Shown: in pieces, positions 4,330 to 57,100 of the stretch
Layout of the letters: each line of letters opens with the position of its first letter
Position numbering within the stretch: position 1 is the stretch's first letter
NCBI GenBank assembly: GCA_907165135.1
Contig: OU015569.1
Location: 1,240,001-1,304,000, forward strand
Reading direction: 5' to 3'
Length of the DNA: 64,000 nt
From: Oikopleura dioica
Taxonomy: Eukaryota > Animalia > Chordata
Made by a program: the position numbers and the translations under genes
Notes under the pieces: generated by a model
What the model was told of the DNA's origin: nothing
Database searches by the model: none
What the model saw: the letters and a program-made list of their open reading frames with translations, nothing else

Positions 4330-5348
4330 ATGGTGAGTTTTCTCGTGGTTATGATTTGAGTTGCTAGGGGATATTCTCAGAGTTATCTTTTTGTATTCGT
4401 AGCTGATGTTGTTGTATGATGTTACGGTCGGATAGAAGGCTATATTTTTAATTCAGGCGAAAGGATCGAAGGCTTCCAAAGCTAAGCGCGTCGCCGCTGC
4501 CCCTTCTTTGGTCAAGAAGCAGAAGACCAAGAAGGTGGAGAACCCCCTTTCCGAGAAGCGACCAAAGAACTTCGGCATCGGCGGAACTGTCCAGCCCAAG
4601 CGAGATCTGACCCGCTTCGTCAAGTGGCCCAAATACGTTCGACTTCAGCGACAGCGGGCTGTCCTCCAGAAGCGACTCAAGGTCCCACCAATGGTCAACC
4701 AGTTTAGCCAGACCCTCGACCGCCAAACTGCCACTGCTTTCTTCAAGCTTGCTGAGAAGTATCGACCAGAGAGCAAGGGCGAAAAGAAAGCTCGACTCTT
4801 GGCTCGAGCTGAGGCCAAGTACGAAGAATTCAAAGTTACCAAAATCATGATTTCGTTTCTAGGGCCGCCGGTAAGGCTGACGAGCCCGCCTTCAAGCGAA
4901 CCAATGTCCTCTCTGTTGGTGTTAACCGAGTTGTTACCGCCGTTGAGAAGAAGAAGGCTTCGCTCGTCGTTATTGCTCACGATGTCGATCCCCTCGAAAT
5001 CGTCCTCTTCCTCCCTACCCTCTGCCGAAAGATGGGCGTCCAGTACTGTATCGTCAAGGTGGTTTAGATTTACAAATCCATATATTTACTCCGTTCAAGG
5101 GAAAAGCTCGACTTGGTCGACTTGTTGGCCTCAAGACCGCTTCTTGCGTCGCTCTCACCGATGTCAATGCTGAGGACAAGAATGCTCTCGCCAAGATTGT
5201 TGAGTCCGTCAACACCAACTACATGGAGCGAGCTGATATGATCCGAAAGACCTGGGGCGGACAGATCATGTCTCAGCGAACGAACAACCGAATCGCCAAG
5301 ATGGAAAAGCTCCGAGCCAAGGAGGAGGCCAAGAAGGCTATTCACTAA
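4330..5348 (+). CDS. RPL7A: 60S ribosomal protein L7a (eL8), 4 exons
   Basis: Exons 4330-4332 (ATG only), 4457-4818, 4863-5058 and 5100-5348, joined by GT-AG introns of 124, 44 and 41 bp. Motifs [62 protein letters not shown] at 5359. Confidence 0.97.
4351..4406 (+). ncRNA. Candidate intronic box C/D snoRNA in RPL7A intron 1
   Basis: Degenerate C box ATGATTT (4351) and D box CTGA (4403-4406). Just upstream, TGTATTCGTA is complementary to the conserved 28S segment UACGAAUACA (rRNA sequence recalled, needs checking). This intron is about three times longer than its neighbours. Confidence 0.4.
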
Positions 5349-5624
5349 CTGCGGAGATAATAAATCTGCACTTGTAAAATGCTAAAGCGACTTCAGTATG
5401 CATGAGAGTCTGAACCTGCTGATCTACTTTGTTTCACTGAAAGCAAAATTAGCAAATGGATTGACTAATTACTTTAATAATCAGAAACGATATAAAAAAT
5501 AAGAACCTATTTAACTTTATCTAACAATTTTGAGAGATTGCATAGTCGGCGCTGTGGAGATCGAAGTCTGTTCTTCACCCTCAGTTTGAAAAAGAGAACG
5601 TTTCTCAAATCAAAGACTAGAAAG

Positions 5625-7504
5625 TTAACGTTTCAAACTCGTAGCAATAAGAGAAATCTCCGCATCTGATATTCTGCAACTGTCGAGATTAGTGTTTTTC
5701 GTTCGTGCAGATTTCTTCGAGCTGCTCGCGTCCCCAGCAGGAACGTACTTTTTGCAGAACACTCGCTGAACGCATCCAATTATTCTGTTCTCCTTGTTGA
5801 TTTCTTACCACTAGGTCTCTTCTGAACTTTCTCCCAAGGAAAGAATATATAATAGCATTTATCATTGGACAGGAAATAAGGAACCAGTCTTTCACATAAA
5901 TCAGCTTGTGGCAAAAATCAACGCCGAAATCGATCTTGGTTAAACGAATGAAATAGAAGAGCAGGCACGGGGCAGAACCCAGAAGAGTGGCAAGAAGGAA
6001 AATCGCTATATTCCTCGAAACTGTCTTTGAGTTGCTCCGAGATTGATTCCCGATCGACGAAAGCATCGTTTCGCTCTGTCGAATCTTTTGTCCAATTTTG
6101 CAGTAAAAGAACACTGAACTAGTAGTAACACAAGGCTGCTGGTATCTGTGCACCTGTAAGCGCAGCAGGTAGGCAAAAACCAAAAATGAATCGCGCTATG
6201 TAATGGGTGGTTTCTCCAACGGAAGTCGGTAAAAGACATTTGCTTAGCGACTCGATCAGGGTTCGGTATTTTGAATTCGCAAAATTATTCGTTTTTCATT
6301 TGAATTTCTATTTATTCGTTTACGAATATTCTCTAATGAGCGAATATGCAAAACGAATGAAAACGAATTTTCTCGGAGAATTTTTCAGAAATTCAGCGAA
6401 TTTCTCAAATATTCGCTTTGCCGCGCGCTCTGATTGGTCGGGCTTTGACGTTGCGCAGCCTATAATTTTATTTTCACCGCCCAAATAACCTTATAGCTCG
6501 CGGGCGCCACCCTTTTCTCGCCCGCGGCCCTGGAGTTCAGCCAATCCAGGGCTGTACGCTCAATTTCGAGCGAATATTCGCCCGAATAGGCGATTCGCGA
6601 ACAATCGCTCATTCTCTTAAGAAAAGAGCATATTCGCTGCGTGTATTGGCGAATTTTTCGACGAATTCAAAATACCGAACCCTGGACTCGATGTCTGGGG
6701 AGTACTCTTTGCACTTAATTATATTATTTCATATTACGGCATAATTCATCATGTACCTGTGATTCTAAATGCAACTTCGTGGCGTTAGAATCTTCAGCTA
6801 AAAATGTAGAAAAGAAGCTGCAATCTTCAAGGGTGTGAGCAGTCCAAACTTTTATACAAGAATAGGTTTCATTTCCTTCGGCATTGATGACTTTCGTGAG
6901 TGAGGAAAAATACATCAGAGGCGCAGAGCATAAAAGCGACCAGGCGAGAATGATGATGGAGAGCAAGGCTATCCTGGGAGCAGGACGGGACTGGCCAAGG
7001 CTGACGCGATGTAGAATGTGATATCGGTCGAAAGCAACAGCTGTGATGACGAGTATCGACACAGTGAGGAAGAACTCTCTTCCCGTATTTTTAAACTTGC
7101 ACCACGCTTTATCCAAAATGCCGTTCGAATCTGAAAAGCTTTCTTCTTGTATTACACGCCAAGGTGGATACAGGCAGAGCGTATGCGCGACTGCCAGCGA
7201 GATTTATATTCTATGCTCAAACAAGTTGTTATACAATGTTTAATAAACATAGTTATTTTAAAAATCTCTGATTAAAAGAAGATCGGCGATTGTCAGTAGA
7301 GTCACGAGAAAGTCCGCGGCGTTCTTTCGCGTCGTTGAAAACGTGACGATGAGGATTATTCCTTCTCTTCGGATACTAACATGTTTTTAAAGAATGCGAG
7401 ATTTGTCAGATCAAGTATCCATTCCGTTCAAGATAATGCCTAGAGCACAGCTAAACTCCCTTTGTAACCGAAAAGCTATTTCTTAAAGGAGCGTACCTGA
7501 ACAT
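5625..7504 (-). CDS. Class A (rhodopsin-like) GPCR, peptide-receptor-like; one exon interrupted by a MITE
   Basis: Spliced reading gives LGIILNG|IILIV (TM1), LTIADLL (TM2), WCK..AFDRY (TM3), FIFGFCLPAALT|VFFYCKI (TM5) and CPMINAIIYSFLGRKFR (TM7). Introns include 7362-7424 (GA-AG) and 6714-6756. The start is uncertain. Confidence 0.9.
6257..6684. mobile_element. hAT-type MITE A (428 bp) inside a GPCR exon
   Basis: Perfect 23-bp TIR CAGGGTTCGGTATTTTGAATTCG. 8-bp TSD GACTCGAT at 6249-6256 and 6685-6692. Many internal ATTCG/CGAAT subterminal motifs. Confidence 0.95.
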
Positions 7505-9257
7505 GATCGTCCAATTTTTTAGCTTGAAATCGTTGCTAGCCTTATTTTAGCTTTCAAATTTAATAAATTTACGAGTCTACTGAAGTAAATTCAAAGGAGG
7601 AGAATATGAGTGTGCGATCTAAAAACGCTTTTGCCCGCGAAATGTCAGTTCGAATCAATAGAAACCATCCGACATTAACTTCGAATTAAATTCGAAAGCC
7701 ATTAACAGAACCTCCGGACCATCCCCATTGCCGCCGGAGTCACAATCTAGAATTACATTAACAGTCTTTAGCAGATACTGTAACATACTGCAAGGTTCAT
7801 CTGGCTGCAGCAAACAGAGTTCCTCGCACAATGCTCTTTCCATAATAGCTTCTTCTTCCTTGTTTTTCTCCTCATAAAACTTTGGAATAGATTTTAACAC
7901 TCCAAGAAAGTATGAATTAGGCACTTTATGAATTGACCGAGACACTAATTCGACTTAAGTTTCAAGCAAATTTTCTTAATTAAAACGAGCTTTTTTCATT
8001 AATATTTAAATCTGTTCCGTCAAGTAATAGAAAGAGCATTCGCATAGCTTCGTTTTGTCGATGTCTTTAATATTTGTCGTCTCATTTTCCTGAGTTCTAG
8101 CTTTCCCGAGCAATAAGACTGCTCCGGACTGATAATGAACGAGGAAAGTTTTTGCGCTGGTTCTCTATTTTCTTTTCTCTCTCTCTGTCTCTCAGTCCGG
8201 TACTGAAAATACAGCGATCATTTTCTAACTGCGCGTCAATCGTAAAACCAAAAAATCGTCACCAGCAGTGCAAATAAAAGATCTAAAACGTTTTCATGTT
8301 TATCGGAGTTTAGGTGTCCCCATCGGGGAATTGCGGCTTCTTTCAGTAAAGCTAAAGTTCCTCTTTTCAGCCTTTTAAATGCAAAGCAAATTATAATTAA
8401 ATCCTCTCATTATAATTTCCCCCATCAAAGCTGATTACCGTTGAAGCAATTATAATCGAACTTCTCTCTCGCGTTTTAACAATTCTCGTCTTCTGCAATT
8501 CAAATTTGAAGTATATAATATTCTTCTACTGCCTTCTACTGCCGATTCACATGTTGGTGTAACCTACTTGAAAGCGGGACTAAGCAAGTAAGTAGGTATA
8601 TTTTACGTCGAATAATGCTTGAAGCGAAAAAGCTCTCTATTCTCTGAGCAAGTGTATGTATTTTAAATTCAAGAGATTAGTCTCTCGCTGGAGATTATAT
8701 AATGCAACTTCGGTGGTACACTTTGAGCTCATAAGAGAAGCATAACTTTCAACTCAATTCATAGATTATTTAAGACGGTGACAGATTCTGAGGTCAATTT
8801 GAAAATAAATAAAAATCGCGTCTTACCTCGCTCTAAATAATCATCAATGGGGAATATTGGATTTCTCTTTCGGGGATTGCGGCCTCTCAAGTCAAGAAAA
8901 GTCTAAGTTAGACTCTAACTTATTGAACTTTTTTTTTAAAAAGAGAAATCATTGTTCGGAAAAAGCCCCGGCGGCAATTTTAGTTTCAAGTACTAGAAAG
9001 AAACGTGGCGTTATCCTTGGACCAAATTTAATTTATTCTTGATGGGAGTTAGTAAATTTTACAGTTAACGGTTTGGAATTAGTAAAAAGGGATAGTTCTA
9101 GAGTAAGCGATTCCTTCTTCTATCGAGCAGGTTCCTGCAGGCCTGAGTTGATTCGATTCGCAGCAAACTTCCGATGGGATAGAGTACATTTGGAAACTGC
9201 CAAGGTCTGTAAGACAGCACATTGGCGTGTGATCTGAATTATAAATCTTCATTATCT

Positions 9258-10991
9258 TCATTGCTTTTTGAAGATCTTACCTATTGTCGAGCTAGAGGTG
9301 GGGGCACAAAGAGACTCGTCGTAGTCCATGAAATTAACGTCAGGAGCACCAATGGTTCCAAGAACGTTGGCGAGCGCCTTGTCGCATTCGCAAATGGCCT
9401 TCTCAAAAGGAGAAGAGGCGTCACAGACGAACGATGTTGGTTCTGGATATTCCCAAAGCGACGAGATCAGTGAGCCTGGTTGGAAGATGTCGACCGAGCA
9501 ACGAGCGCACTTTTTCCAAGCATTTATTGCCAGGTCAACATCGTCAACGATCTTACCCGCATTTTTACGGAATGGCTCGAGCTCGCCACGTCCTGTGCAG
9601 CCGTAATTCCAAAGAGCACTTGCAGTGGCGGCTGCTGCGTCTCCAGACACTCCTCCTGCACCAAAGAAAGATGCGAATCCTGACGCCCAAGCGGACAGCC
9701 ACCAATTGGCATTGACTTTGGCGGCTTGAGCAATGAGTTTGATGCAGACGCGCTCGCTGTTTCGGCCAATTGGATCATATGCGATTGCACAGAGATCGTG
9801 TTCCTTTCCAAATTGATCCGCAGTTGGCGTCCAAGTACAGTCAGATTGTCCAGTTGAGGTGTCGACAGTCGTGCAGGTCATTCCTGCAGGTCCGTTGAAC
9901 ATGATGCGATCCATGTCAACAAATGTGCCGAAGCCAGTACTGTACTCTGAATACCAGCTCATCGACCAGGAACCGTAGAAGCTGTAGACTTCTCCGTTCT
10001 TCGGACTGTCACCAGTGAATGTAGGAAGGCCTTCACAATGAGCTGGTTCGCTGGAGGGATCGCTAACCTGACGACGGCCACGAGAATGGAAATCGTCATG
10101 GTGGTCTTCTTCATTGTCTCCAAAGAGTCCAGTAAAAAGTTGGAAACCGCTCTGCTCCATCAGTCGTTTTTCTTTCTTGCTGGTCGGCATTCCAGGAGTC
10201 CACACTGTTGCCATGAATTGAGCAGGCATTGAACTCCTTAGATTTCCGTCGGCATCGAAATCTTCGACTTGAATCGCGATGGGTTTGATTCCTGACGCAA
10301 ACGTGTCTTGTAAGGGATCGTAAGTGACTTTGCACAGGTCGGCATCAAGAACTAACGAGTCAAAGCGGCCATTGTCACGTGCCAAAGCGCCACCTTCTGC
10401 CATCGTTGCCCATCGACACTTGATGCTGTCTCCATCGGGGTCTACTGGATAGAGATAGAGGCTCTGGTCGCTGCAGCCGGTCATGATGTACCATACAGCG
10501 GGTATGTTGAAGCGCGGTGAGTTGTTTGAAACATCCGCAACGGTCGAAGTGAAGATGTAGTTTCCGTTGAAACTGTTGCCGTCGTCGTCCTGCATGGAGA
10601 TTGTGCAGCAGCCGGAAGAGGTCTGAGTGAACGGCTGAGTTATTGAGAACTCTTCGTCAATCGATCCAAAGCAGTAGTGAGAGTTGACATCCAAGGACGC
10701 TGCCGTTTCAATTTCGGAAACGACATATGTGCCGCTCGTGCCGTTGTTAGCAGCGTCGATCAAGAGTGTTCCGTCTGGGTAAGAGTGAACCTGCTCAGCG
10801 ATCATTTGAGCACTCTCTACCTGGTTGTCGACGTCGTTCTGAGTGCAGCCGCTGCCGTAGCCGTCCATTGATCGTCGCCAAGCCATCGTTCGAGTGACGG
10901 ACATCTCACCGGTTCCAGCGGCGTACTGATAGGAACCTGCTCGGTAGTGGGAAGCAAAAGCGGAGGAGATAACACTCGCCAAAAATTTCAT
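9258..10991 (-). CDS. Intronless secreted protein (577 aa), oikosin-like, with a C-terminal degenerate phospholipase A2-like domain
   Basis: Signal peptide MKFLASVISSAFA, Cys-rich body with SHYRAG, NNSPRF and DPDGD motifs, basic site RGRR. C-terminus NYGCTGRG..GKIVDDVDLAINAWKKC..ICECDKALA has secreted-PLA2 spacing without the catalytic His-Asp. The oikosin label is inference. Confidence 0.85.
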   Translation of the reverse strand: MKFLASVISSAFASHYRAGSYQYAAGTGEMSVTRTMAWRRSMDGYGSGCTQNDVDNQVESAQMIAEQVHSYPDGTLLIDAANNGTSGTYVVSEIETAASLDVNSHYCFGSIDEEFSITQPFTQTSSGCCTISMQDDDGNSFNGNYIFTSTVADVSNNSPRFNIPAVWYIMTGCSDQSLYLYPVDPDGDSIKCRWATMAEGGALARDNGRFDSLVLDADLCKVTYDPLQDTFASGIKPIAIQVEDFDADGNLRSSMPAQFMATVWTPGMPTSKKEKRLMEQSGFQLFTGLFGDNEEDHHDDFHSRGRRQVSDPSSEPAHCEGLPTFTGDSPKNGEVYSFYGSWSMSWYSEYSTGFGTFVDMDRIMFNGPAGMTCTTVDTSTGQSDCTWTPTADQFGKEHDLCAIAYDPIGRNSERVCIKLIAQAAKVNANWWLSAWASGFASFFGAGGVSGDAAAATASALWNYGCTGRGELEPFRKNAGKIVDDVDLAINAWKKCARCSVDIFQPGSLISSLWEYPEPTSFVCDASSPFEKAICECDKALANVLGTIGAPDVNFMDYDESLCAPTSSSTIGKIFKKQ

Positions 10992-11378
10992 ACTTTCAGA
11001 TTTTCTGGGAGGCTCTTTTTTGATGCTCTGTCTGGCACTGAGTTGAATTATATACTGGCTGCTATCTCAAAATGTACACAAATTGAGACACCAAAACATA
11101 CGATAAGATTGGACCGGAGTCCAGCTCGGTGAATTTATCGCTTATATTTTGCCAGAAAACAAGGTTAAGAGCGGTTAGTTCTTTTACGGTTGTTTTTTTA
11201 AAGAACATACGATTCGAGATACCAAGTAATTTCAAGCAAATAAGAACCAATTGAAATGAACAAAATTTCAGTGCTAGAATAATCTAACTGAAATGCCCTG
11301 TGGCACTTTCACGGCGAAATAAATCAGAAGAAAAAATGGAAATGGTATTCACTCCGAAATCGTGCACATAAGAGAATA

Positions 11379-14300
11379 ATGCGTCTGCTGCCTGTGTGTT
11401 TCCTCACACTGGCGCAGGTTCGCTCACAAATTCCGAAATGCGAGCCGCCCGAGTTGCCAGAAGGGACTCGCATGGTCTGTCCAAGAGGTAGAAAGAATGG
11501 GGACAAGTGTACGACGTCTTGTGAACCAGGTTTCATAAAGGTATGATCTGATTGAATAGTATTTGGTGGAGAAAATCAATTTAGACTGGGCGAGACATCA
11601 CTATCACATGCAGATGCGTTCGTTTGAAAGCAGGAATCAAGTGCAAGTTCAACGAGCACCCGGCAGAGTGCATTCGAGAAGGACACGGCCAACTAGGTCG
11701 TGATGGACGAGTAATGGTGGCTCCAACTCGTCAGCCGGAAACAACTAAGGCTGGACGGCAAGTATTTTATCCTGGAGGGACGCCACCATCACCGCCAAAA
11801 CCAAAACCTGCAAAGCGCCCTAATAATGTTAATATCGGTGGCTTTGAAGCTCGTCAGCCTAGCACTATTGAAAGAAATGGAGTCTCATTCAACTCGAATA
11901 ATAAAGCCAACGTCGGTTCTTCATTACAGGTATAGACAGTAAACTTAGCACAGTAAGGTTTACCAAAGCTTCTAAGGCAACTCTCGCCCGTCAAATCGAG
12001 CTCCTTCAAGCTCAACAAGACCAGATCAACACGCTGATTAACAAACCACCGCCGGCAAAAGTTGGAATTCCGACGATTCCTTTCGGCGGTGGTTCCATTA
12101 CTGCTAATTTTGACAATGCTCAAGAGCAGCAGCAAAGTGTTGAGCGAGTCAATCTACTCGCTTGTGGAGATCCTTCGAAAATCGGCGTTTACTCGATCGT
12201 TGATAAGTGGGATACAGGATTGCTTTCAGAAAATTCGATAAAAAAAGTGATTAAGGACTGATAAAATTAAAAAAAAAATTTAAGCCGAAAAATGGTGTAC
12301 GCCCTTATCGAAAATTATCAGAATAAGAGTTCGTATTTTCTAAAGCGTAAAAAGGGTTTATGGCATCAGTAAACGTCGATCTGTCCATGATAAACGATGA
12401 TTGGAACGTAGCAGTAAGTTTTCCGGAAAAGATTTACCCTGGAAATGTGCAAGTTTGGAATGCACGATTTGTGAAACATTCTGACGATGGAAAAACTCTT
12501 CTTTTTTCGTCGAAATCGAGACATTCAAAAATGGGCCAACTCATTTAAAAAAAGTTTTAACTGTCAATCTTATTGACTTATTTGAATTTAAAGTTGACTC
12601 TTGAAAAGCTGAGGGACCGACGTTACCGAAATTCGGCTTCGTTATCTCTGATTTGCCTGTCTACTCGGCAAAGCCGCAGTCCGGAAGTGTCATCTACTAC
12701 GATAGGAAACTTCAAAGCTCCTGCGTCGATGGGGAGAACATTTGCAACGGTGCAATGCCAGTATCATCCAGTAGCCAAATGTTCGCTGCGGAAAGTTATG
12801 CTCGTACAACTGCACGTCCGACAACGACAACTCCTAAGCCCACGACAACGACGAAAAAAATGAGCCTGATGGAACTTCTTCAACAACGCAAGAAAATGAT
12901 GGAAGCGCCTCAAGAAGCAGAAGTTGAAGACGACTTCTTTGTAATTCCGACGAATAATCCAGTTTCTTATCAAAGTGAAAACATCGCTGTTGGCCCTCCG
13001 AGTTCAGGTGGAAATGATATCTGCGCCAACCAAATCATGGGAGAGTTTATCCGATTGAACAGTTGGTACACAGAAGAAACTGGAATGTCTGGAGTATCGG
13101 CCAAAATTGAGCTCACTGTTGGTCAACCACCAAGCCAAGATTTCGAAATAAACGTCCAGTTTACAGTGCCCGTGCACAACATAGAAGTCTGGACATTTCA
13201 GGCGATTCCTTCTGACAACCCTTCTCTTTGGCAATTCAAAAGAAGCCGGGATATTCCTACAACAGTAACATGGATTTCGACATCAACACGCTCTCGCCAA
13301 CGCCGAATCACGAGGACATTTCCGCAATTGTTGTCTATTGCGACGGCGCTGCTACTAACTTAGCGGCTATGTCTGTTATGGGCCAGGCAGGACTATCTGG
13401 GTCCACAGGCAGTCTTAGACCAAATGACAAGAGTCAATTATTTCAAATTCAAAACTCGGGTGGAAACTTCAATCATAGAGATCAACTATCTAAAGATCGA
13501 GATGTAAAACAGCTCATAGGAAAAATGCAAGGAGAACTTGAGAACGATATTATGAGCTATCCTTACTCACCAAGATGTACAGGCAGTATTCCAAGAGGCC
13601 TTCCTCCCATGGCACCAAGACAATCGAACATTCAGTGCGCTGAGAGTGATCCAGACTTATTCAAATACGATTTAAAGCGTGTGCTTTGCTTGTCAGGATA
13701 CTTTTACAAAGCGCAAAGAGTAGGCCCCACTGCTTCGAGAGATGTTCCTTGGAGAGGCATAGCTGGACTAAAACACGGCTGTGACATTCAGAAAGATCTC
13801 GTCGGTGGATGGTACGATGCCGGAGACAACGTTATCTTCACCTTTCCTCTTGCGTACACTATTACGATGCTCAGTTGGTCCGTCATCGAGTTCAAGGACG
13901 CGTTTGTAGCAGCTGGCGAGTATGAGAAGATACTTCGCGAGCTAAAATGGGGAACTGATTTCCTAATCAAGGCGCATATTTCTAAATTCGAGCTTGTCGG
14001 ACTCGTCGGTGACCCTCATTTGGACCATAAGAAATGGATGCGCCCAGAAGATCCAACATCGCCAAAAACACCAACTTTTATAATTGACGCTGAAAACCCT
14101 GGATCTGAATTAGCCGCAGAAGCAAGTGCAGCACTTGCAGCAGCGCATCTTGTTTTCCGTTGGGCGGAGCAAGAAGATTACGCTGATTTGTGCTTGCAAC
14201 ATGCTCTGGAGTTGTTTGAATTTGCGGATACATATCGGGGCAGCTATCATGACTCCATTCCTAAGGTATTGCTTTGTTTTACTAACTAAATGTATAAATT

Positions 14301-15114
14301 TCAAGGTTTACGACTTCTACAGAAGCTGGGAGGGCTATGAAGATGAGCTCGCATGGGCGGCGATCTGGCTATTCGGCGCTACCTCCGATAACGTCATGCT
14401 AACAGCTTCGATGGCCTTCTACAAAAAATCAGGCCAGTTGAACAGAAAACCAATCGACTGGGACAACAAATGGCCAGGTGTCCGTTTGCTTTTGGCCAGA
14501 CTGACGAAGGACGAAGAGCTTGCGCGCGAATCTCTCAGTAGACTTCGGAAGACAATTTCTTCAGCTAAATACACCCCAAAAGGGTTGATCTTCATCAATG
14601 AGTGGGGACCTCTTAGACACGCAGCAAATCATGCTTTTCTGGCCTTTGTTTCAACGAAACTCGACCTCGACAATTCAGACGATCTTCTTGACTTCGCAAA
14701 GAAGCAAATGTTCTACATCTATGGCGAGGGCGGAAGAAGCTACATAGTCGGCTTTGGAAAGAACTATCCGACAAAACCTCATCACAGGTGAATTATTTTA
14801 TCGAGTGATTTATAACGCAATTTTTCAGATCTTCTAGCTGCCCTGTTTCGCCGCAAGAGTGCGGCTGGGATGTTGCCGACGACAAAATGAGCCCGAATCC
14901 ATGGATACTTTTTGGGGCGCTTGTTGGAGGACCTGATCGCTTTGACTCCTTCATAAACGACAGGAAAAATCATCAACAAAGCGAAGTCACGCTGGGTAAG
15001 ACCGATAAAATTTCACATGCGCAACGATAAACTTTAGATTACAATGCGGCTCTTGTCGGAGGAACGGCCGGCCTTCTCTACTACATCGATCTCAACTACC
15101 TAACTGGAGTATAA
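11379..15114 (+). CDS. Secreted modular GH9 endoglucanase: signal peptide, Sushi-like domain, two CBM2-like modules, Pro/Thr linker, GH9
   Basis: GH9 motifs DLVGGWYDAGDN, KWGTDFLIK, YEDELAWAAIWL, PHHRSSSC, GALVGGPD and SEVTLDYNAA, with catalytic Asp/Asp and Glu present. Upstream KWDTG|FMASVNV..DWNVAVSF..VQVWNA..FGF has CBM2-like Trp spacing. One apparent -1 frameshift at AAAA 13238-13241. Confidence 0.92.
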
Positions 15115-50105: not shown

Positions 50106-52992
50106 TCAGTCTCCAGTATAGAGACTTCCCCCTTTGGCCATGGATTTAGCGAAGTCTTTGGATATAACAAGTTTCGGCGTGCCGCTGACAGGATCGACCC
50201 CTTTGTAGACCTGAATCCCTTTGCTGTTTGCGTAAGCGACGATGAACTGGACCGCGCACTTAGTGGTGAAATGATGGGAGAACAGATGATCGAACCAATC
50301 TTTGTCTTTGGCGAAATTATCCACGAAATTTTTGTAGTATTCCTGAAAATGTCCTGATTACGGAATGTAGCGGCGGAATGAACTTACATAGCTGCCACCA
50401 AAGGGAATGTCGCGAGTTGGAGAGTCCTTGTCTTCTTGCACTAACGCTTCGATACACTTTTCTAAATCGAGACCTTTCGGTTTGAGTCTCGTGACTTTGC
50501 TGGCATCATCTTCTTTAGCCTTGACTGGACCATCCTCTTCTTCCTCCTCTTCTTTCTCATCCTTTTCCTCCTTCTGTCGCTTAGCCCAGGCTTCGTTGGT
50601 CTTTTCGATCTTCTCCATGAGTTCTTTCATCATTCGTCGCTCTTTCTTGTTGGCATAATCTCAAATTTGATTCAGTAAAGGACATTTCAACTGCTCACCT
50701 ACTTTTGTATGGCAAATCGTCCTCGTTTTGATGGCAAATTTCATCCTCAAAAGCACCGTATAGACTAAAAACGTTTTTTTTCTTCAGAAATAAACCAAAT
50801 AACTTACGAAACGACATCCGAAGAATGGTTGAATGGGTCCCGGCTATAGAGCTCCATCAAGTTGAATCGTGTCTTGTTCAATTTTGGATAGAACTGAGCA
50901 AGAAATTCCAAAGCCCTTTCTTCGTCCTTCCTGTAGTGTTCCAGCAGTTCCTCGAAAATGCGCAAGACTTGCTCTCCAACGCCTATTGCCTTCTTGTATA
51001 AACCGGGCTTCGCTTTTCTGTAAGCGAGGCAGGCGTCACAGTTCAGGTATATCAGATACTTCTTTAGCTAAATTCTACGTTTCCGCATTGGTATTCAAAA
51101 ACAAAAACTAACCTGCAATTCATCTTCCAAATTTTTGCACACGGCACGCTCTAAGCAGTGAATCGCTTGGGCGAGTAAGTCGCCGGATCGCTCGGCACCA
51201 AAGTAATCGTTTTGATTCCTGCTAGGTTCGATCTTCTCCTCGCCAGTGTTGCTGTTGACGTCGCGGACACCCTCACTCGCTTTTGAGAACTGTTCCTTGG
51301 CTTTTGTCTTGAGTCTCTTGCATGTTGCCATGATGGCTTTGAGTGGGATCTTTGCTCTGTATTTCATCGGCATCCGGATGAAGCGTTCGTGAAGTTCGTA
51401 GGTGATGTAGCACAGTTTGACTTGGAAGACGATCGTTGCGTTGCCGGGAATTCGCGGAAGCATGCCCCACTTTCCATATGCCCACTCAGGTTTGCAAATG
51501 ACGAAGTGCTGCGATCCTGAAGTCATGAGTTCGATCGCCGCTTCTAGGCCAGGAAGAGTTGCGCCACAGCAGATCTCCAGGTGCTCCATCATTCCTTAAT
51601 CAGAGTACAGTCCAGAGACCCTCAAAAAGTATTTCTACCTGTCTCAACATCTCCACGGTCGTAAGTATAATCAATCGGTGGAGCCAAAAGGTCATCGCCA
51701 AGCCACATGGCATAGTGAATACCGACTAGTACAAGAGCTTATGAAGCAATTACATATAAAACTACTTACCAACTGGCAAATAATTGATGTCACCGCCATA
51801 CTCTTTCATCAGCCCCTCAGCACGCTCCTTTTCTTGAGCCAGTGCGTCAGCTAAAAGTAAAGGTAGCAGATGTTGTGCTCAGTTACTAGCATCTCTACTT
51901 ACCAACAGTGATTCCCCGTTGTTGTCGTCTTTGGTAAGGCTCATGTTCATTTACCGGGATTTTCGTTATGCGGACTCCTCCATTAGTATCTAAAGAAGAT
52001 ATAATTGAACAGGGATGAATTTTTCATTTGAAATCATAGAAGAAAACGTATAATTTCATCTTTTTGCTGGTTTTCTCTTTGGTGTAAATTTCAGTCTGTA
52101 ATCACCTGGCACCTCTTCTGTAATATTGTAAAGGTAAGCGAGTCTCTCCTTAGAACAGGGATGGAAATCTGAGCGGCACGGCACGGCACGGCACAGCGGC
52201 ATGGCACGGCACGGCACGTGCCGTACCGTGCCGTGCCGGAGAGTAAAATCTGGTTGCGGCACCGCGGCACAGTAAAATTAACCATTCCTTGATTTGTTAA
52301 TTTAAGGGGCTTGACGGCCCTTCGGGCCGTTTCAGCCCCGTTCCTTGATTTGTTAATTTAAGAGGCTTGACGGCCCTTCGGGCCGTTTCAGCCCCGTTCC
52401 TTGATTTGTTAATTTAAGAAGCTTGACGGCCCTTCGGGCCGTTTCAGCCCCGTTCCTTGATTTGTTAATTTAAGGGGCTTGACGGCCCTTCGGGCCGTTT
52501 CAGCCCCGTTCCTTGATTTATTAATTTAAGGGGCTTGACGGCCCCAACCCCACTCTCATCCATTGTTAGAAAAATTCAAATTATCCAAGATTTTGATTTT
52601 ATTATGGTTTTCATTTTAACTTTTGAAAATTCTATAAGTACACTAGCAGCTTTAATTTTTTTCATTTATATAAATAAGTTATATGATTCGAATTTGTGCC
52701 GTGCCGTGCCGTTGTGCCGCGGCACCCCATTATCGAATTTTGTGCCGTGCCGTGCCGTACCGTGCCGCGGCACGGGTATTTTGGTTGTGCCGTGCCGTGC
52801 CGGTGCCGCTTGAAAATTTTCTCCTATTTCCATCCCTGCCTTAGAATTGGCACCGGGAAAATTTCTAGGGAAGAGCAGTCTGGAAAAACGATCGCTCTTG
52901 GCTGCAGCATGTTGGAAGTTGAGCTCTAATTCCAGCCCGTCCATTTCAGCAGCAAGCTGCGAGTCAACGCCTATTTCGTAGTCGTACAGCAT
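50106..52992 (-). CDS. FKBP6: FKBP6/shutdown-like FKBP-TPR co-chaperone; exon 1 interrupted by a MITE
   Basis: SKERLAYLYNIT (cf. LYERLSQRMLDI), VGIHYAMW, GLEAAIELM..KPEWAYGKWG..IPGNATIVFQVKL, IPLKAIMATC, TPR YLIYLN..GEQVL, NYANKKERRMMKEL. Exon 1 joins exon 2 via a GA-AG intron (inferred). Confidence 0.8.
52156..52838. mobile_element. hAT-type MITE C (683 bp) inside FKBP6-like exon 1
   Basis: 13-bp TIR CAGGGATGGAAAT. 8-bp TSD CCTTAGAA at 52148-52155 and 52839-52846. Subterminal (GGCAC)n on the left and (GTGCC)n on the right. Confidence 0.95.
52285..52544. repeat. 56-bp tandem repeat, about 4.6 copies, inside MITE C
   Basis: Units start at 52285, 52341, 52397, 52453 and 52509. Each full unit contains the hairpin ACGGCCC-TTC-GGGCCGT. 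Confidence 0.97.
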
Positions 52993-54135: not shown

Positions 54136-57100
54136 TTACAGTCGACAGAAGTAGATGGGGGCGTTGGGCATTTCCTGCTCCTTCATGTCGATGAGGCCTT
54201 CAGCCCCGAGTGCCATGAGGGCGGAGAACGCTTTCGCCGCCTGCGTTCTTTTCATTCCGCGGCAGAAATCGTTGAAGTTTGCGTAAACGCCGACTTCAGG
54301 GAGCCAGTTGAGCAACTAAGCAACGAGTTAGGAATTGAGAACATGAACAAAGAATAAAGTACTTACGGCTTCTTTGAAATCTTGTTGGCTGCCTTGCGAA
54401 GAAGAGCGAGGCTGCGGGTTGAACTCAGGAACTTGCATCTGCGGAGGCTGAACCTGAGGGACTTCAACCTGGGGGACCTCAACTTGTGGCGGTTGAGGAG
54501 CGGGGAGTTGAACTGACGGAATGCTGGTAAATGGCGTACTCGCCATTTTTGGACCAGAGACATCGTTCGGGAGGGAGATGTCATTTCCACTCGTGGGCCT
54601 GTTCACGAACGTGTTGCTCTTGCTAGAGGAGCTCGCCGTGCTTCGGTTTTCAGCCGTCACATTTCGCCGTCCTAAGAAGATATTTTTTCCGACAATGATG
54701 GTTTTCAATTACCTTCTCCCGTGCTTCGGTTTTCCATGCTACTTGAGATGCTTCGAGCGTCGTTCGTAGCGTTTTGGTTTCCTAGAAAAGATTCGTCATT
54801 TTCTTCAACAAGACGATGCTTTCATTACCTCTTGCACGTCGTCCTGCAGTCTTGGCATCACGGCGGAACGCCTCGCAGACCTCTTCGTGCAGTTTGTCCG
54901 CAGTGCAGGGGTTCAAGAAGATCTCCCTTCGGTTGTCGTTCAAAGCCTTCAGAACTCCTCTGTCTTTGGAGCCGACCTTGAGCTCGATTGTGCCAAAGAA
55001 CTCAAAAGGGTCGTTGATGAGTTCGCTGACATCGCCGAAACCGAGCGCTTCGTAGCCTTCTTTGCTCGGATCTCTGAGCGAGATCACCTCGTCGATAATC
55101 AAGGCCCTCTTCTTCTTTCCGCGCTTTTCCTAGAGTTTAATAACCACTTGGTCTGATATGATTTCTAAGTACTTACGTTGGTCACAGTTTCATTGTTGTT
55201 TTCATCGTCGGGCGAAGGAGTTTCCGAAGCAGTGGCAATGTTCTCCTGTGGAAGAGAAAGTGAAATCGCCGGTTCGGTGGCACTCTCGTTGATTGCAGTC
55301 GTCTCTGGTCCATGTCCGGCGATTGCGCTCAAATCGAACGGGTTCTTCTCTTCTGGTGCAGGCGGTTCCTGCTGGGGAGCGTCATTTGGAGGCTGGACCG
55401 CGGTGTATTCGAACTCTGGTCCAGGTGCTGGAATGGACGGTCCAGAAGATGGCTGCTCGGAGTCTGCGCGCTGGGGCTGAGACTGGGTCGAGGATGGAAA
55501 GTTACTGTTGAGTTCCTCGTCAGTGACACCCACAATATTTTCCCCGAAGAGCGCCACCATCTCGTCGTGATCGTATGGCAGTTCAACTGGTGCATCATCG
55601 TCCAGATTCAAGAATTCGGATTCGTCGCGCATCGTAATCTGCTCCCATCGCGCTCTGAAAATGCAAATTAGGACGAGAAAAAACATGAGTTCGAACCTGT
55701 TTCGATCTTCATCGGGAAACTCAATTTCACCCATATCTTCATCGTTGATGTCGTTGATTGAGAAGTCGAAAAGAGTCTTGTCGGCTTTCTTGGTCTTGGG
55801 GACCGGCTTCTCCCATTTATGGGTGTTGCTCAGGGGTCTGGATTTTGGCCAAAAATGAAAAGCGAAAGCGAAGCGAAAGCGAAAATTTTTCAAAAATTTA
55901 AAGCGAAAGCGAAGCGAATCAAATTATCGAAAGCGAAAGCGAAGCGAAGCGAAAAATTTTTCTAAAAAGCGAAAAAAGCGAAAATTTTCCGATAATATTT
56001 GACCTTCGAAAAAGTGTCCATTTTAGGTTCGCTTTCAATTTTATTTCTTTTCGGGCATTCGGACTCCCTCTCCGGAAAGAGCGAAATCGTGGATTTTCTG
56101 ATCTAACTCAGCTGAAGAGGATGTGTGGCTCGAGTGATCTCCATTTGCCCAAATGCCGTTTCCCCAAATCACCGTTTATCCAACTTGGGGGAACCTAAAT
56201 CTTGGGCAAACGGCAATGTGAATAAATGCCGATACAATGCCGATCCCGGGTTATTGGACGTTCATCCCGAGACTGACGGTATGAGAGGCCAGAAATGACG
56301 TCTGAAAAGCCAGGATCGAAGTTGTTGAGTCCGGGATTGATCTTGGTGAAGCCGGGATTGACTGTGGAGTAACCAATAAGTTATTGGCAATAGTTAAAGT
56401 TATATGAATCATATTATATGATCAATCAATTTAAAAAAATTCACGTCGCCGTTTGCCAATGTCGCCGTTTCCCCAAGTTCGGCAATCGGATATCTCTGGC
56501 GACTTGGGAAAAGTTATCCCGGAAAACGGTGACCACTCATCAGCTCAGCGTAGCTCACAATATATTATTGTCAATATTGGCTACTTTGAAAACATTCAAA
56601 TGATCTCAGCAAAACTCTGAATAGTGCAAATTAAGTTCAATAAGCAAAATTCTCAGTTATGCTTTCGCTAAAGCAGATGAAAATAACAAAATATTCAATT
56701 CTTAGAACGATTTCTTAAGAGCGAAATTTTGCGAAAATATTTGGTAAAAAGCGAAAGCGAAGCGAAGCGAATTGAAATTACAAAAAGCGAAAGCGAAGCG
56801 AAGCGACTTCGCTTCGCTCTGCTTCGCTTCGCTCATGAGCGAATTCGCAAAGCGAATCCAGACCCCTGTGTTGCTAATACTAGCGAGAAAAGCAGCGCAG
56901 TCCTTTTCGAGATAGGCAGCCTAAATTGACTATCAGAGAAGTCCCAGAAAATGTAAAATATTACCTTTTTGTTGAGGACTTGGGAGAGTCCCTTGAGCAG
57001 TGTTCCGCTCTGCCGGATGCTACTGGTGGTTGAGTTGGCTCTCATTTCTTCGACGACTTCGTCGATTGAGACTTAATAATATTTCCACAGCTCGAAGAGG

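What the first reader, a model, noticed from the sequence alone, without database searches (positions are those of the whole stretch)
6249..6692. MITE A forms a canonical GT-AG intron adding two codons to a GPCR extracellular loop
The coding strand reads GAC ATC GAG TCC AGG|GTTCGG..CCCTGATCGAG|TCG CTA AGC. The TIR provides a phase-0 GT donor at 6680 and the TSD provides the AG at 6252-6251. Removing 430 nt gives DIES-RS-LSKC in ECL2, upstream of an intact TM5. The acceptor is GAG, which is weak.
Basis: partly seen in the sequence, partly recalled or inferred. Interest (0 to 1): 0.8.

Follow-up and report, generated by a model that had tools for sequence, protein, structure and literature searches.

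The report
Young MITE splitting a receptor exon
A small mobile DNA element recently jumped into a coding exon of a working receptor gene in the tunicate Oikopleura dioica; it could be spliced out as a new intron, as the public gene model assumes, but no RNA evidence exists and the element is absent from other individuals.

Summary
A 428-bp element (6257-6684) has perfect 23-nt terminal inverted repeats and an exact 8-bp target-site duplication, so it is a hAT-like MITE. It sits in the ECL2-coding exon of a minus-strand class A GPCR.

The window is O. dioica OKI2018_I69, X-specific region. The "intron" is therefore an existing computational prediction, not a new one.

The insertion is young and polymorphic. 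The empty site, with one copy of the 8-mer, occurs in another DNA run of the species, in a Tara metagenome contig and in a Logan contig. All orthologues have the ECL2 length of the empty allele.

The gene is under strong purifying selection: 18 synonymous and 0 non-synonymous differences against one wild haplotype, 13 and 0 against another.

Splicing is untested. No listed RNA run holds the stretch, the three laid RNA runs come from a diverged lineage and gave no reads, and no transcript-derived protein was found.

The in-frame GT-AG pair is not beyond chance, since 32% of simulated insertion sites offer one. Both sites are weak and the donor lies inside the 23-bp TIR stem.

Verdict: a real, recent insertion allele and a candidate nascent intron, unproven. 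First-stage notes of this scan report similar exonic MITEs elsewhere in this genome; those are unchecked.

The parts
6257..6684 (-). hAT-like MITE, 428 bp, non-coding, about 43% GC
   Evidence: Both ends were defined by the TIRs. Contigs of other copies in run X30 match up to 6257 and 6684/6685 and then diverge (loose ends). Word depth over the element is 4,500-15,000 against about 87 for the flanks, which suggests tens to over a hundred copies. The longest overlapping ORF is 93 aa and runs out into the flank. This is the only copy in the window.
6662..6684 (-). 5' TIR (CAGGGTTCGG...). It contains the candidate GT donor at 6680-6679.
   Evidence: In the predicted RNA fold this arm is fully paired with the 3' TIR.
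6257..6279 (-). 3' TIR (...CCGAACCCTG). It contains no AG at its end.
6685..6692 (-). Upstream copy of the 8-bp TSD (ATCGAGTC on the coding strand)
   Evidence: Empty alleles have this 8-mer once.
6249..6256 (-). Downstream copy of the TSD. It supplies the candidate acceptor AG at 6252-6251.
6251..6680 (-). Candidate 430-nt GT-AG intron, as annotated in public gene model g13590.t1. Splicing has not been shown.
   Evidence: P0007 reads ...DIESRSLSKC.... There is no RNA support.
6681..6713 (-). Upstream half of the split exon (CKEYSPDIES plus R). It would become a 33-nt micro-exon if the MITE is spliced.
   Evidence: The acceptor at 6714 is confirmed by the orthologue L001 (TTTTAG|TGT AAA GAA TAT) and by P0007 and P0008.
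6154..6250 (-). Downstream half of the split exon, covering the end of ECL2 and the first part of TM5
6757..7179 (-). Exon coding TM3 (DRY motif), TM4 and the first part of ECL2
   Evidence: Pfam 7tm_1, E 5e-10. Orthologues are 74-79% identical.
6714..6756 (-). Ordinary 43-nt GT-AG intron
   Evidence: The wild haplotype has 2 differences here.
6114..6153 (-). Ordinary 40-nt GT-AG intron inside TM5
   Evidence: The X30 indels at 6120 and 6123 fall inside it.
5809..6113 (-). Exon coding the rest of TM5, then TM6 and TM7
   Evidence: Pfam 7tm_1. Alignment to solved receptors.
5766..5808 (-). Ordinary 43-nt GT-AG intron
   Evidence: P0007 joins ...RRDLV|RVFCKK.... The X30 indels at 5770 and 5772 fall inside it.
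5625..5765 (-). Last exon (C-terminal tail), with the stop codon at 5627-5625

Best explanation
This is a very recent, still polymorphic insertion of a multi-copy hAT-type MITE. It landed in the ECL2-coding exon of a functional, selectively constrained class A GPCR on the X-specific region of the Okinawa O. dioica reference.

Shown:
- The element, its TIRs and its TSD.
- The ancestral empty site in other haplotypes.
- The intact, constrained gene around it.
- Read-through hits a stop after 24 MITE-encoded codons, before TM5.

Inferred: the reference allele is an insertion allele whose only route to a working receptor is splicing. The GT(TIR)-AG(TSD) pair used by the public gene model is one arithmetically valid option, not an established intron. 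I judge it more likely than not that this pair is not used efficiently. In that case the allele is a loss-of-function or leaky allele, tolerated in a lab line and in a hemizygous male.

Reasons for that judgement:
- The donor is AGG|GTTCGG, with a pyrimidine at +3.
- The acceptor is GAG.
- The donor lies inside a 23-bp perfect duplex.
- Two AATAAA hexamers lie on the sense strand inside the element.
For: - Element anatomy.
- Genome identity: the window is 100% identical to OU015569.1 (XSR) of OKI2018_I69. The sequenced animals were males (PMC8008620), so this allele is hemizygous.
- Empty site in X30: a DNA contig joins 6248 to 6685, skipping 436 nt with 8 nt of ambiguity.
- Empty site in Tara contigs L002 and L003, which are 97-98% identical to the window.
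- Empty site in Logan contig L007, 87% identical.
- Orthologues P0008 (Bergen), L001 and L004 have the same ECL2 length as the empty allele.
- Purifying selection: 18 synonymous and 0 non-synonymous differences against L002 over a 993-nt CDS, and 13 and 0 against X30. Indels fall only in the introns.
- Read-through stop.
- Weak sites and competing junctions.
- The TIR stem buries the GU donor. Fold energy is -172.8 kcal/mol, z = -6.
- The in-frame pair is expected at 32% of random sites.
- No transcript evidence.
Against: - AUGUSTUS chose exactly this intron, so the pair is acceptable to a species-trained model.
- O. dioica has a permissive spliceosome with 11-12% non-GT-AG introns and massive lineage-specific intron gain (PMC8008620; PMC4122922).
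- The same gene carries a lineage-specific 63-nt GA..AG insertion inside TM1 codons, yet it remains under purifying selection. Exonic insertions can therefore be tolerated in this gene, presumably by splicing.
- Two other CAGGG-ended elements lie in ORF-rich sequence of the same hemizygous window. Three X-linked nulls in one mature male would be a lot.
- From my own knowledge: maize hAT elements (Ds, Ds1) inserted in exons are spliced out using sites at their termini.
- The absence of RNA reads is uninformative, because the laid runs come from a diverged lineage.
Confidence: 0.5

Rival explanations
1. Nascent intron, exactly as the first reader and the public gene model propose. The spliceosome uses the GT inside the 5' TIR (6680) and the AG inside the downstream TSD copy (6251). 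It removes 430 nt and yields a receptor with two extra residues (R-S) in ECL2. The TIR stem may help by bringing the two sites together.
For: - The pair is in frame and stop-free.
- It is used by AUGUSTUS model g13590.t1.
- Among the GT donors at the element's 5' end it ties for the best consensus match, 5 of 9.
- O. dioica has a permissive spliceosome and a high rate of intron gain.
- A lineage-specific 63-nt insertion in TM1 of the same constrained gene shows that such events persist.
- The ECL2 site lies between two cysteines in a variable stretch: DIES-LSK here, against DIRD-LNK and DSED-LNS in the orthologues. A 2-residue insertion there is plausible to tolerate.
Against: - There is no RNA evidence at all.
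- The donor has T at +3 and C at +4, and the acceptor is GAG. The gene's own introns have A or G at +3 and A or C at -3.
- The donor is sequestered in a 23-bp perfect helix.
- It would leave a 33-nt micro-exon.
- An in-frame pair of this kind arises at 32% of random insertion sites.
- The allele was seen in only one haplotype, while three other haplotypes are empty.
Confidence: 0.3
2. The element is removed, but through other junctions. One option is skipping the 33-nt piece, from donor 6756 to acceptor 6251, which is in frame and deletes 11 residues. A second is GT at 6675 with AAG at 6243, which replaces LS by RVR. A third is GT in the TSD (6687) with AAG at 6243. Non-canonical G*-AG pairs are also possible. 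The result would be a mix of in-frame and frameshifted products, that is, a leaky allele.
For: - 16 in-frame G*-AG combinations exist, 5 of them GT-AG.
- The upstream donor CAG|GTACAT at 6756 is much closer to consensus than the TIR donor.
- AAG at 6243 is generally a better acceptor than GAG (established splice-site knowledge).
- From my own knowledge: maize Ds and Ds1 insertions are spliced through several alternative sites.
Against: No RNA data are available. AUGUSTUS preferred 6680/6251. Several of these products delete a conserved cysteine or part of ECL2.
Confidence: 0.17
3. The host is a decayed pseudogene, or the insertion is an assembly artefact, so the question of splicing is moot.
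For: The annotated model is truncated at its N-terminus. There is an in-frame TAA just upstream of the TM2/ECL1 exon. No expression was detected.
Against: - 31 synonymous and 0 non-synonymous differences in two haplotype comparisons.
- All exons from TM1 to the stop are open and conserved across lineages.
- The truncated model is explained by non-canonical introns that AUGUSTUS cannot place.
- An exact TSD, perfect TIRs and element ends shared with other copies are not what a misassembly produces.
Confidence: 0.03

Closest known systems
Maize hAT elements Ds/Ds1 inserted in exons of wx and adh1 and spliced out of pre-mRNA (Wessler and colleagues; from my own knowledge, not checked in the held library)
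   Same: A short non-autonomous hAT-type element sits in a coding exon. Donor-like sequence is provided by the element terminus (CAGGG/TAGGG-type end). The acceptor lies at or beyond the other end. The products carry small in-frame scars.
   Different: In maize the splicing was shown on RNA and several alternative junctions are used. Here no RNA evidence exists, and the host is an animal with 40-50-nt introns.
Introners: MITE-like DNA transposons that generate introns on a genomic scale (Huff et al. 2016, cited in PMC13326754; Gozashti et al. 2022, PMC9860276)
   Same: A non-autonomous DNA element with TIRs and a TSD. One splice site comes from the element and the other is created or co-opted from the TSD. 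The host is a marine organism.
   Different: Introner families carry adapted splice signals and are found by the hundreds as spliced introns. For this family only one genic copy was examined, it has no built-in 3' signal (its 3' end is ...CCCTG), and splicing is unproven. The word Oikopleura does not occur in the main text of PMC9860276.
MITE-derived non-canonical introns of the larvacean Fritillaria borealis (Henriet et al. 2019, as summarised in PMC11282704)
   Same: The host is a larvacean tunicate. The introns carry TIRs and TSDs at species-specific positions. The spliceosome has evolved to neutralise transposon insertions.
   Different: The Fritillaria introns are mostly AG-AC or AG-AT and are removed by a modified U2 machinery. 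O. dioica introns are about 88% GT-AG, and the junction proposed here is canonical.
Lineage-specific, often GA-AG, introns of O. dioica (Denoeud et al. 2010, as summarised in PMC4122922)
   Same: Same species, with new intron positions and a permissive major spliceosome. The same gene carries a 63-nt GA..AG insertion specific to the Okinawa lineage.
   Different: As summarised in PMC4122922, those authors favoured reverse-splicing-type mechanisms. A transposon origin with an intact TIR and TSD and a segregating empty allele is not mentioned in what I could read.

Membership tests
hAT-superfamily MITE | 8-bp target-site duplication | tested here: met
   Exact 8-bp copies at 6249-6256 and 6685-6692. 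The 8-mer occurs once in the empty haplotypes.
hAT-superfamily MITE | Short TIRs with a terminal YARNG-type motif (definition from my own knowledge) | tested here: met
   The termini are CAGGG...CCCTG, with a 23-nt perfect TIR.
hAT-superfamily MITE | Small, non-coding and multi-copy | tested here: met
   428 bp with no transposase-size ORF. Word depth in X30 is about 50-170 times that of the flanks.
hAT-superfamily MITE | A matching autonomous hAT transposase with the same termini | not tested
   None is present in the window, and the rest of the genome could not be searched by DNA.
Spliceosomal intron | Absent from mature mRNA transcribed from the allele that carries it | not testable with these tools
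   No listed RNA run holds the stretch. The three laid runs gave zero reads on 5294-9262 and come from a diverged lineage. No transcript-derived protein was found.
Spliceosomal intron | GT-AG (or G*-AG) boundaries that keep the reading frame | tested here: met
   However, such a pair is expected at 32% of random insertion sites.
Spliceosomal intron | Splice-site context like that of the organism's own introns | tested here: inconclusive
   The donor has T at +3, against A or G in the gene's three GT-AG introns. The acceptor has G at -3, against A or C. That is only three local introns, and no genome-wide matrix was available.
Introner family | Many copies of the same element acting as spliced introns in different genes | not tested
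   Only one copy lies in the window. A metagenome scan for the TIR found nothing. First-stage notes on other windows are unchecked leads.
Class A (rhodopsin-like) GPCR | 7tm_1 profile match, a DRY motif after TM3, a TM3-ECL2 cysteine pair, and TM5-TM7 alignable to solved receptors | tested here: met
   Pfam PF00001 scored 39.7 bits against a cut-off of 30.5 on the TM3-ECL2 exon. FDRYHIL, AWCKF and YSC are present. There are 40 PDB matches over TM5-TM7. The TM7 motif is NAIIY rather than NPxxY.

The most novel reading that the evidence does not exclude
A newborn spliceosomal intron caught as a presence/absence polymorphism in a chordate. A hAT MITE insertion would be spliced through a GT in its TIR and an AG in its TSD, leaving a 2-codon scar. 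The intron-less allele still segregates in the same cryptic species. If true, this points to DNA-transposon insertion as a source of the exceptional intron gain of O. dioica, and it offers a locus where intron birth can be studied by crossing in a lab-culturable animal.
Probability: 0.3. Interest if true: 0.7.

Novelty: new member of a known kind. Interest (0 to 1): 0.45.

Why it matters
O. dioica is a textbook case of massive intron turnover. About three quarters of its mapped introns are lineage-specific, and the mechanism is unresolved (PMC4122922).

This locus has four useful properties. The MITE has intact ends. It lies in a gene under clear purifying selection. An empty allele segregates in the same lineage. 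The gene lies on the X-specific region, so males express only one allele. Together these make a clean natural experiment: a single RT-PCR on genotyped animals would show whether a fresh transposon insertion is handled as an intron.

If it is spliced, it links DNA transposons to intron gain in a chordate. If it is not, it is an ordinary segregating knock-out allele, and it also shows that the public gene model contains an intron invented to keep the frame open.

Tried and rejected
- RNA test. Three 2026 oligo-dT RNA runs were laid on 5000-9400 and gave no read on the GPCR. Their reads on the neighbouring gene are only 90-95% alike, so they come from another cryptic lineage and cannot speak to this allele.
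- Older RNA runs of the species label hold next to none of the sampled words.
- Transcript-derived proteins. Two searches of the protein collection, one with the TM3-ECL2 exon and one with P0007, returned only products called on genomic or metagenomic contigs. Apart from the two annotated gene models, P0007 and P0008, they read into introns.
- Other copies of the MITE. There are none in the window, and an exact TIR scan of JGI metagenome contigs found nothing.
- Run shares. I first read the 0.84 word shares of runs X25-X28 as showing that they carry the insertion. I rejected this, because words inside a multi-copy element can come from other copies.
- Pseudogene reading. It is rejected by 31 synonymous and 0 non-synonymous differences and by open, conserved exons.
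- Precise, scarless removal under a G*-AG rule is impossible. An intron ending at AG 6251 and 436 nt long would start with TC.
- Denoeud et al. 2010 (PMC3760481) is not held, so I used the summary in PMC4122922.
- I did not build an organism-wide splice-site matrix. A stop-free-ORF heuristic on 64 kb would give mostly false introns.

Full report
**What is there**

On the minus strand the sequence reads ...GAC ATC GAG TCC AGG GTTCGG... and ...CCGAACCCTG ATCGAG TCG CTA AGC....

- The 23-nt string CAGGGTTCGGTATTTTGAATTCG occurs exactly twice in the window, in inverted orientation, at 6257-6279 and 6662-6684. Shuffles give no matches. The arms extend to 35 nt at 86% complementarity.
- The element is flanked by an exact 8-bp direct repeat at 6249-6256 and 6685-6692.
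- It is therefore 428 bp (6257-6684). It has CAGGG...CCCTG termini and an 8-bp TSD, which is the signature of a hAT-type MITE.
- It has no transposase-size ORF and no second copy in the window.
- It is highly repeated in the species. In DNA run X30 the word depth over the element is 4,500-15,000 against about 87 on the flanks. Contigs of other copies match up to exactly 6257 and 6684/6685 and then diverge.

**The host gene**

The gene is a multi-exon class A GPCR on the minus strand.

- The TM3-ECL2 exon (7179-6757) matches Pfam 7tm_1 above the curated cut-off and carries the DRY motif.
- TM5-TM7 align to solved receptors.
- Comparison with orthologous contigs and annotated proteins fixes the local structure:
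  - intron 6756-6714, 43 nt
  - the split exon 6713-6154
  - intron 6153-6114, 40 nt
  - exon 6113-5809
  - intron 5808-5766, 43 nt
  - last exon 5765-5625
- The MITE lies between the codons for DIES and LSKC, about 15 residues before TM5, so it is in ECL2.
- Read-through runs into a stop after 24 element-encoded codons.

**Where the window comes from, and the existing annotation**

- A 4.4-kb stretch of the window is 100% identical to OU015569.1, the X-specific region of the O. dioica OKI2018_I69 assembly.
- The public AUGUSTUS protein g13590.t1 (P0007) reads ...CKEYSPDIES RS LSKCLLPTS....
- That model starts in TM4 and misses TM1-TM3. This fits an ab initio path that could not place the upstream non-canonical introns. 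It is not evidence of transcript support.

**The insertion is young and polymorphic**

The empty site, with one copy of the 8-mer, was found in three places:

- A contig of run X30, same species label and about 3% diverged, joins 6248 to 6685. It skips 436 nt with 8 nt of ambiguity.
- Two assemblies of a Tara Oceans metagenome contig (L002 and L003, 97-98% identical) read GACATAGAGTCGCTAAGC across the site.
- A Logan contig of a more distant lineage (L007, 87% identical) reads GACATCGAGTCGCTAAGC.

The Bergen protein P0008 and the orthologue L001 have an ECL2 of the same length as the empty allele. The perfect TIRs and TSD agree with a recent event.

**The gene is functional in the species**

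- Against L002, the 993-nt CDS (TM2/ECL1 to the stop) shows 18 synonymous and 0 non-synonymous differences. The other 6 differences lie outside this CDS: four in the two 43-nt introns and two in the putative TM2 intron.
- For the part of X30 that was listed, the count is 13 synonymous and 0 non-synonymous. The listed indels lie outside the coding exons: in the 40-nt and 43-nt introns and in the unresolved TM2-intron and upstream sequence.
- The pseudogene reading is therefore rejected.
- The sequenced animals were males (PMC8008620) and the locus is X-specific. The reference animal therefore had only the filled allele.

**Is it an intron?**

This could not be tested on RNA.

- No listed RNA run holds the stretch.
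- The three runs I laid gave no read between 5294 and 9262. Their reads on the neighbouring gene are only 90-95% alike, so they come from another cryptic lineage.
- Two protein-collection searches found no transcript-derived product.

What the sequence says:

- The GT(6680)-AG(6251) pair is in frame. So are four other GT-AG pairs and eleven further G*-AG pairs.
- Inserting this element at every position of the CDS in silico gives an in-frame, stop-free TIR-GT intron at 32% of sites, and some GT-AG pair at 56%. The pair is therefore not evidence in itself.
- The donor is AGG|GTTCGG and the acceptor GAG. The gene's own introns have A or G at +3 and A or C at -3.
- In the predicted fold the two TIRs form a perfect 23-bp helix that contains the GU donor. 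The energy is -172.8 kcal/mol with z = -6.
- Two AATAAA hexamers lie on the sense strand inside the element.

What speaks for splicing:

- O. dioica has 11-12% non-GT-AG introns and an unusually permissive spliceosome.
- The same gene carries an Okinawa-lineage-specific 63-nt GA..AG insertion inside TM1 codons (7424-7362). It is absent from three other contigs, yet the gene is constrained.
- From my own knowledge, hAT elements in maize exons are spliced through sites at their termini.

**Verdict**

The claim that the MITE forms an intron remains untested. I put about 30% on the annotated junction being the main product, about 17% on removal through other junctions, and about 50% on a loss-of-function or leaky insertion allele. 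It is a new member of known kinds (a polymorphic exonic MITE, a candidate transposon-derived intron). Its value lies in being directly testable.

**Earlier notes of this scan**

First-stage notes report many hAT-like MITEs in coding exons of this genome, including two more in this window. I confirmed only their CAGGG-type TIRs, and that MITE C interrupts an otherwise open frame. None has been followed up with RNA.

Noticed in passing
window 7362-7424 (minus strand): A 63-nt insertion inside the TM1 codons of the same GPCR, between AAC G and GA ATA ATC. It has GA..AG ends, an in-frame TGA, a 7-nt terminal inverted repeat (GGATACT/AGTATCC) and GGAAT at both borders. It is absent from three orthologous contigs of other lineages (L001, L004, L005). 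It is a likely lineage-specific non-canonical intron gain, and it may explain why the public gene model is truncated at its N-terminus.
   Followed up: partly
window 7180-7290 (minus strand): The TM2 coding sequence (ADLLLI) is followed by a variable stretch without a usable GT donor and with an in-frame TAA at 7206-7204 just before the conserved ISLAVAHTLCLYPPW exon. Its length differs between lineages and X30 has 12 nt of indels there. It is probably another non-canonical intron, but its boundaries were not resolved.
   Followed up: partly
window 52156-52838: A second, unrelated element ('MITE C') with the TIR CAGGGATGGAAATCTGAG and the 8-bp TSD CCTTAGAA. It is full of GGCAC/GTGCC repeats. 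It interrupts an otherwise open minus-strand frame (...FPGANSK|ERLAYLYNITEEVPGDY...) of an FKBP-type gene.
   Followed up: partly
window 55831-56868: A third element ('MITE D', about 1 kb) with the TIR CAGGGGTCTGGATT and AGCGA-rich internal repeats. It lies between ORFs of a kleisin-like gene. The reading frames on its two sides do not match across the TSD, so the exon structure there needs work.
   Followed up: no
window 7660-8093 (minus strand): Conserved cysteine-rich coding blocks (TKLCECSFYYL..., ...LCEELCL...VILDCD...) lie upstream of TM1 and are shared with the Bergen-type contig L004. They are either N-terminal ectodomain exons of the GPCR or a separate small gene. The annotated model does not include them.
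   Followed up: no
window 5000-5293: The RNA runs of the diverged lineage show a 41-nt GT..AG intron (5054-5094) in the neighbouring L7Ae-type ribosomal-protein-family gene. They also show a second joint, 5122 to 5189, with TG..CT ends on the plus strand. This illustrates the very short introns of the species.
   Followed up: no
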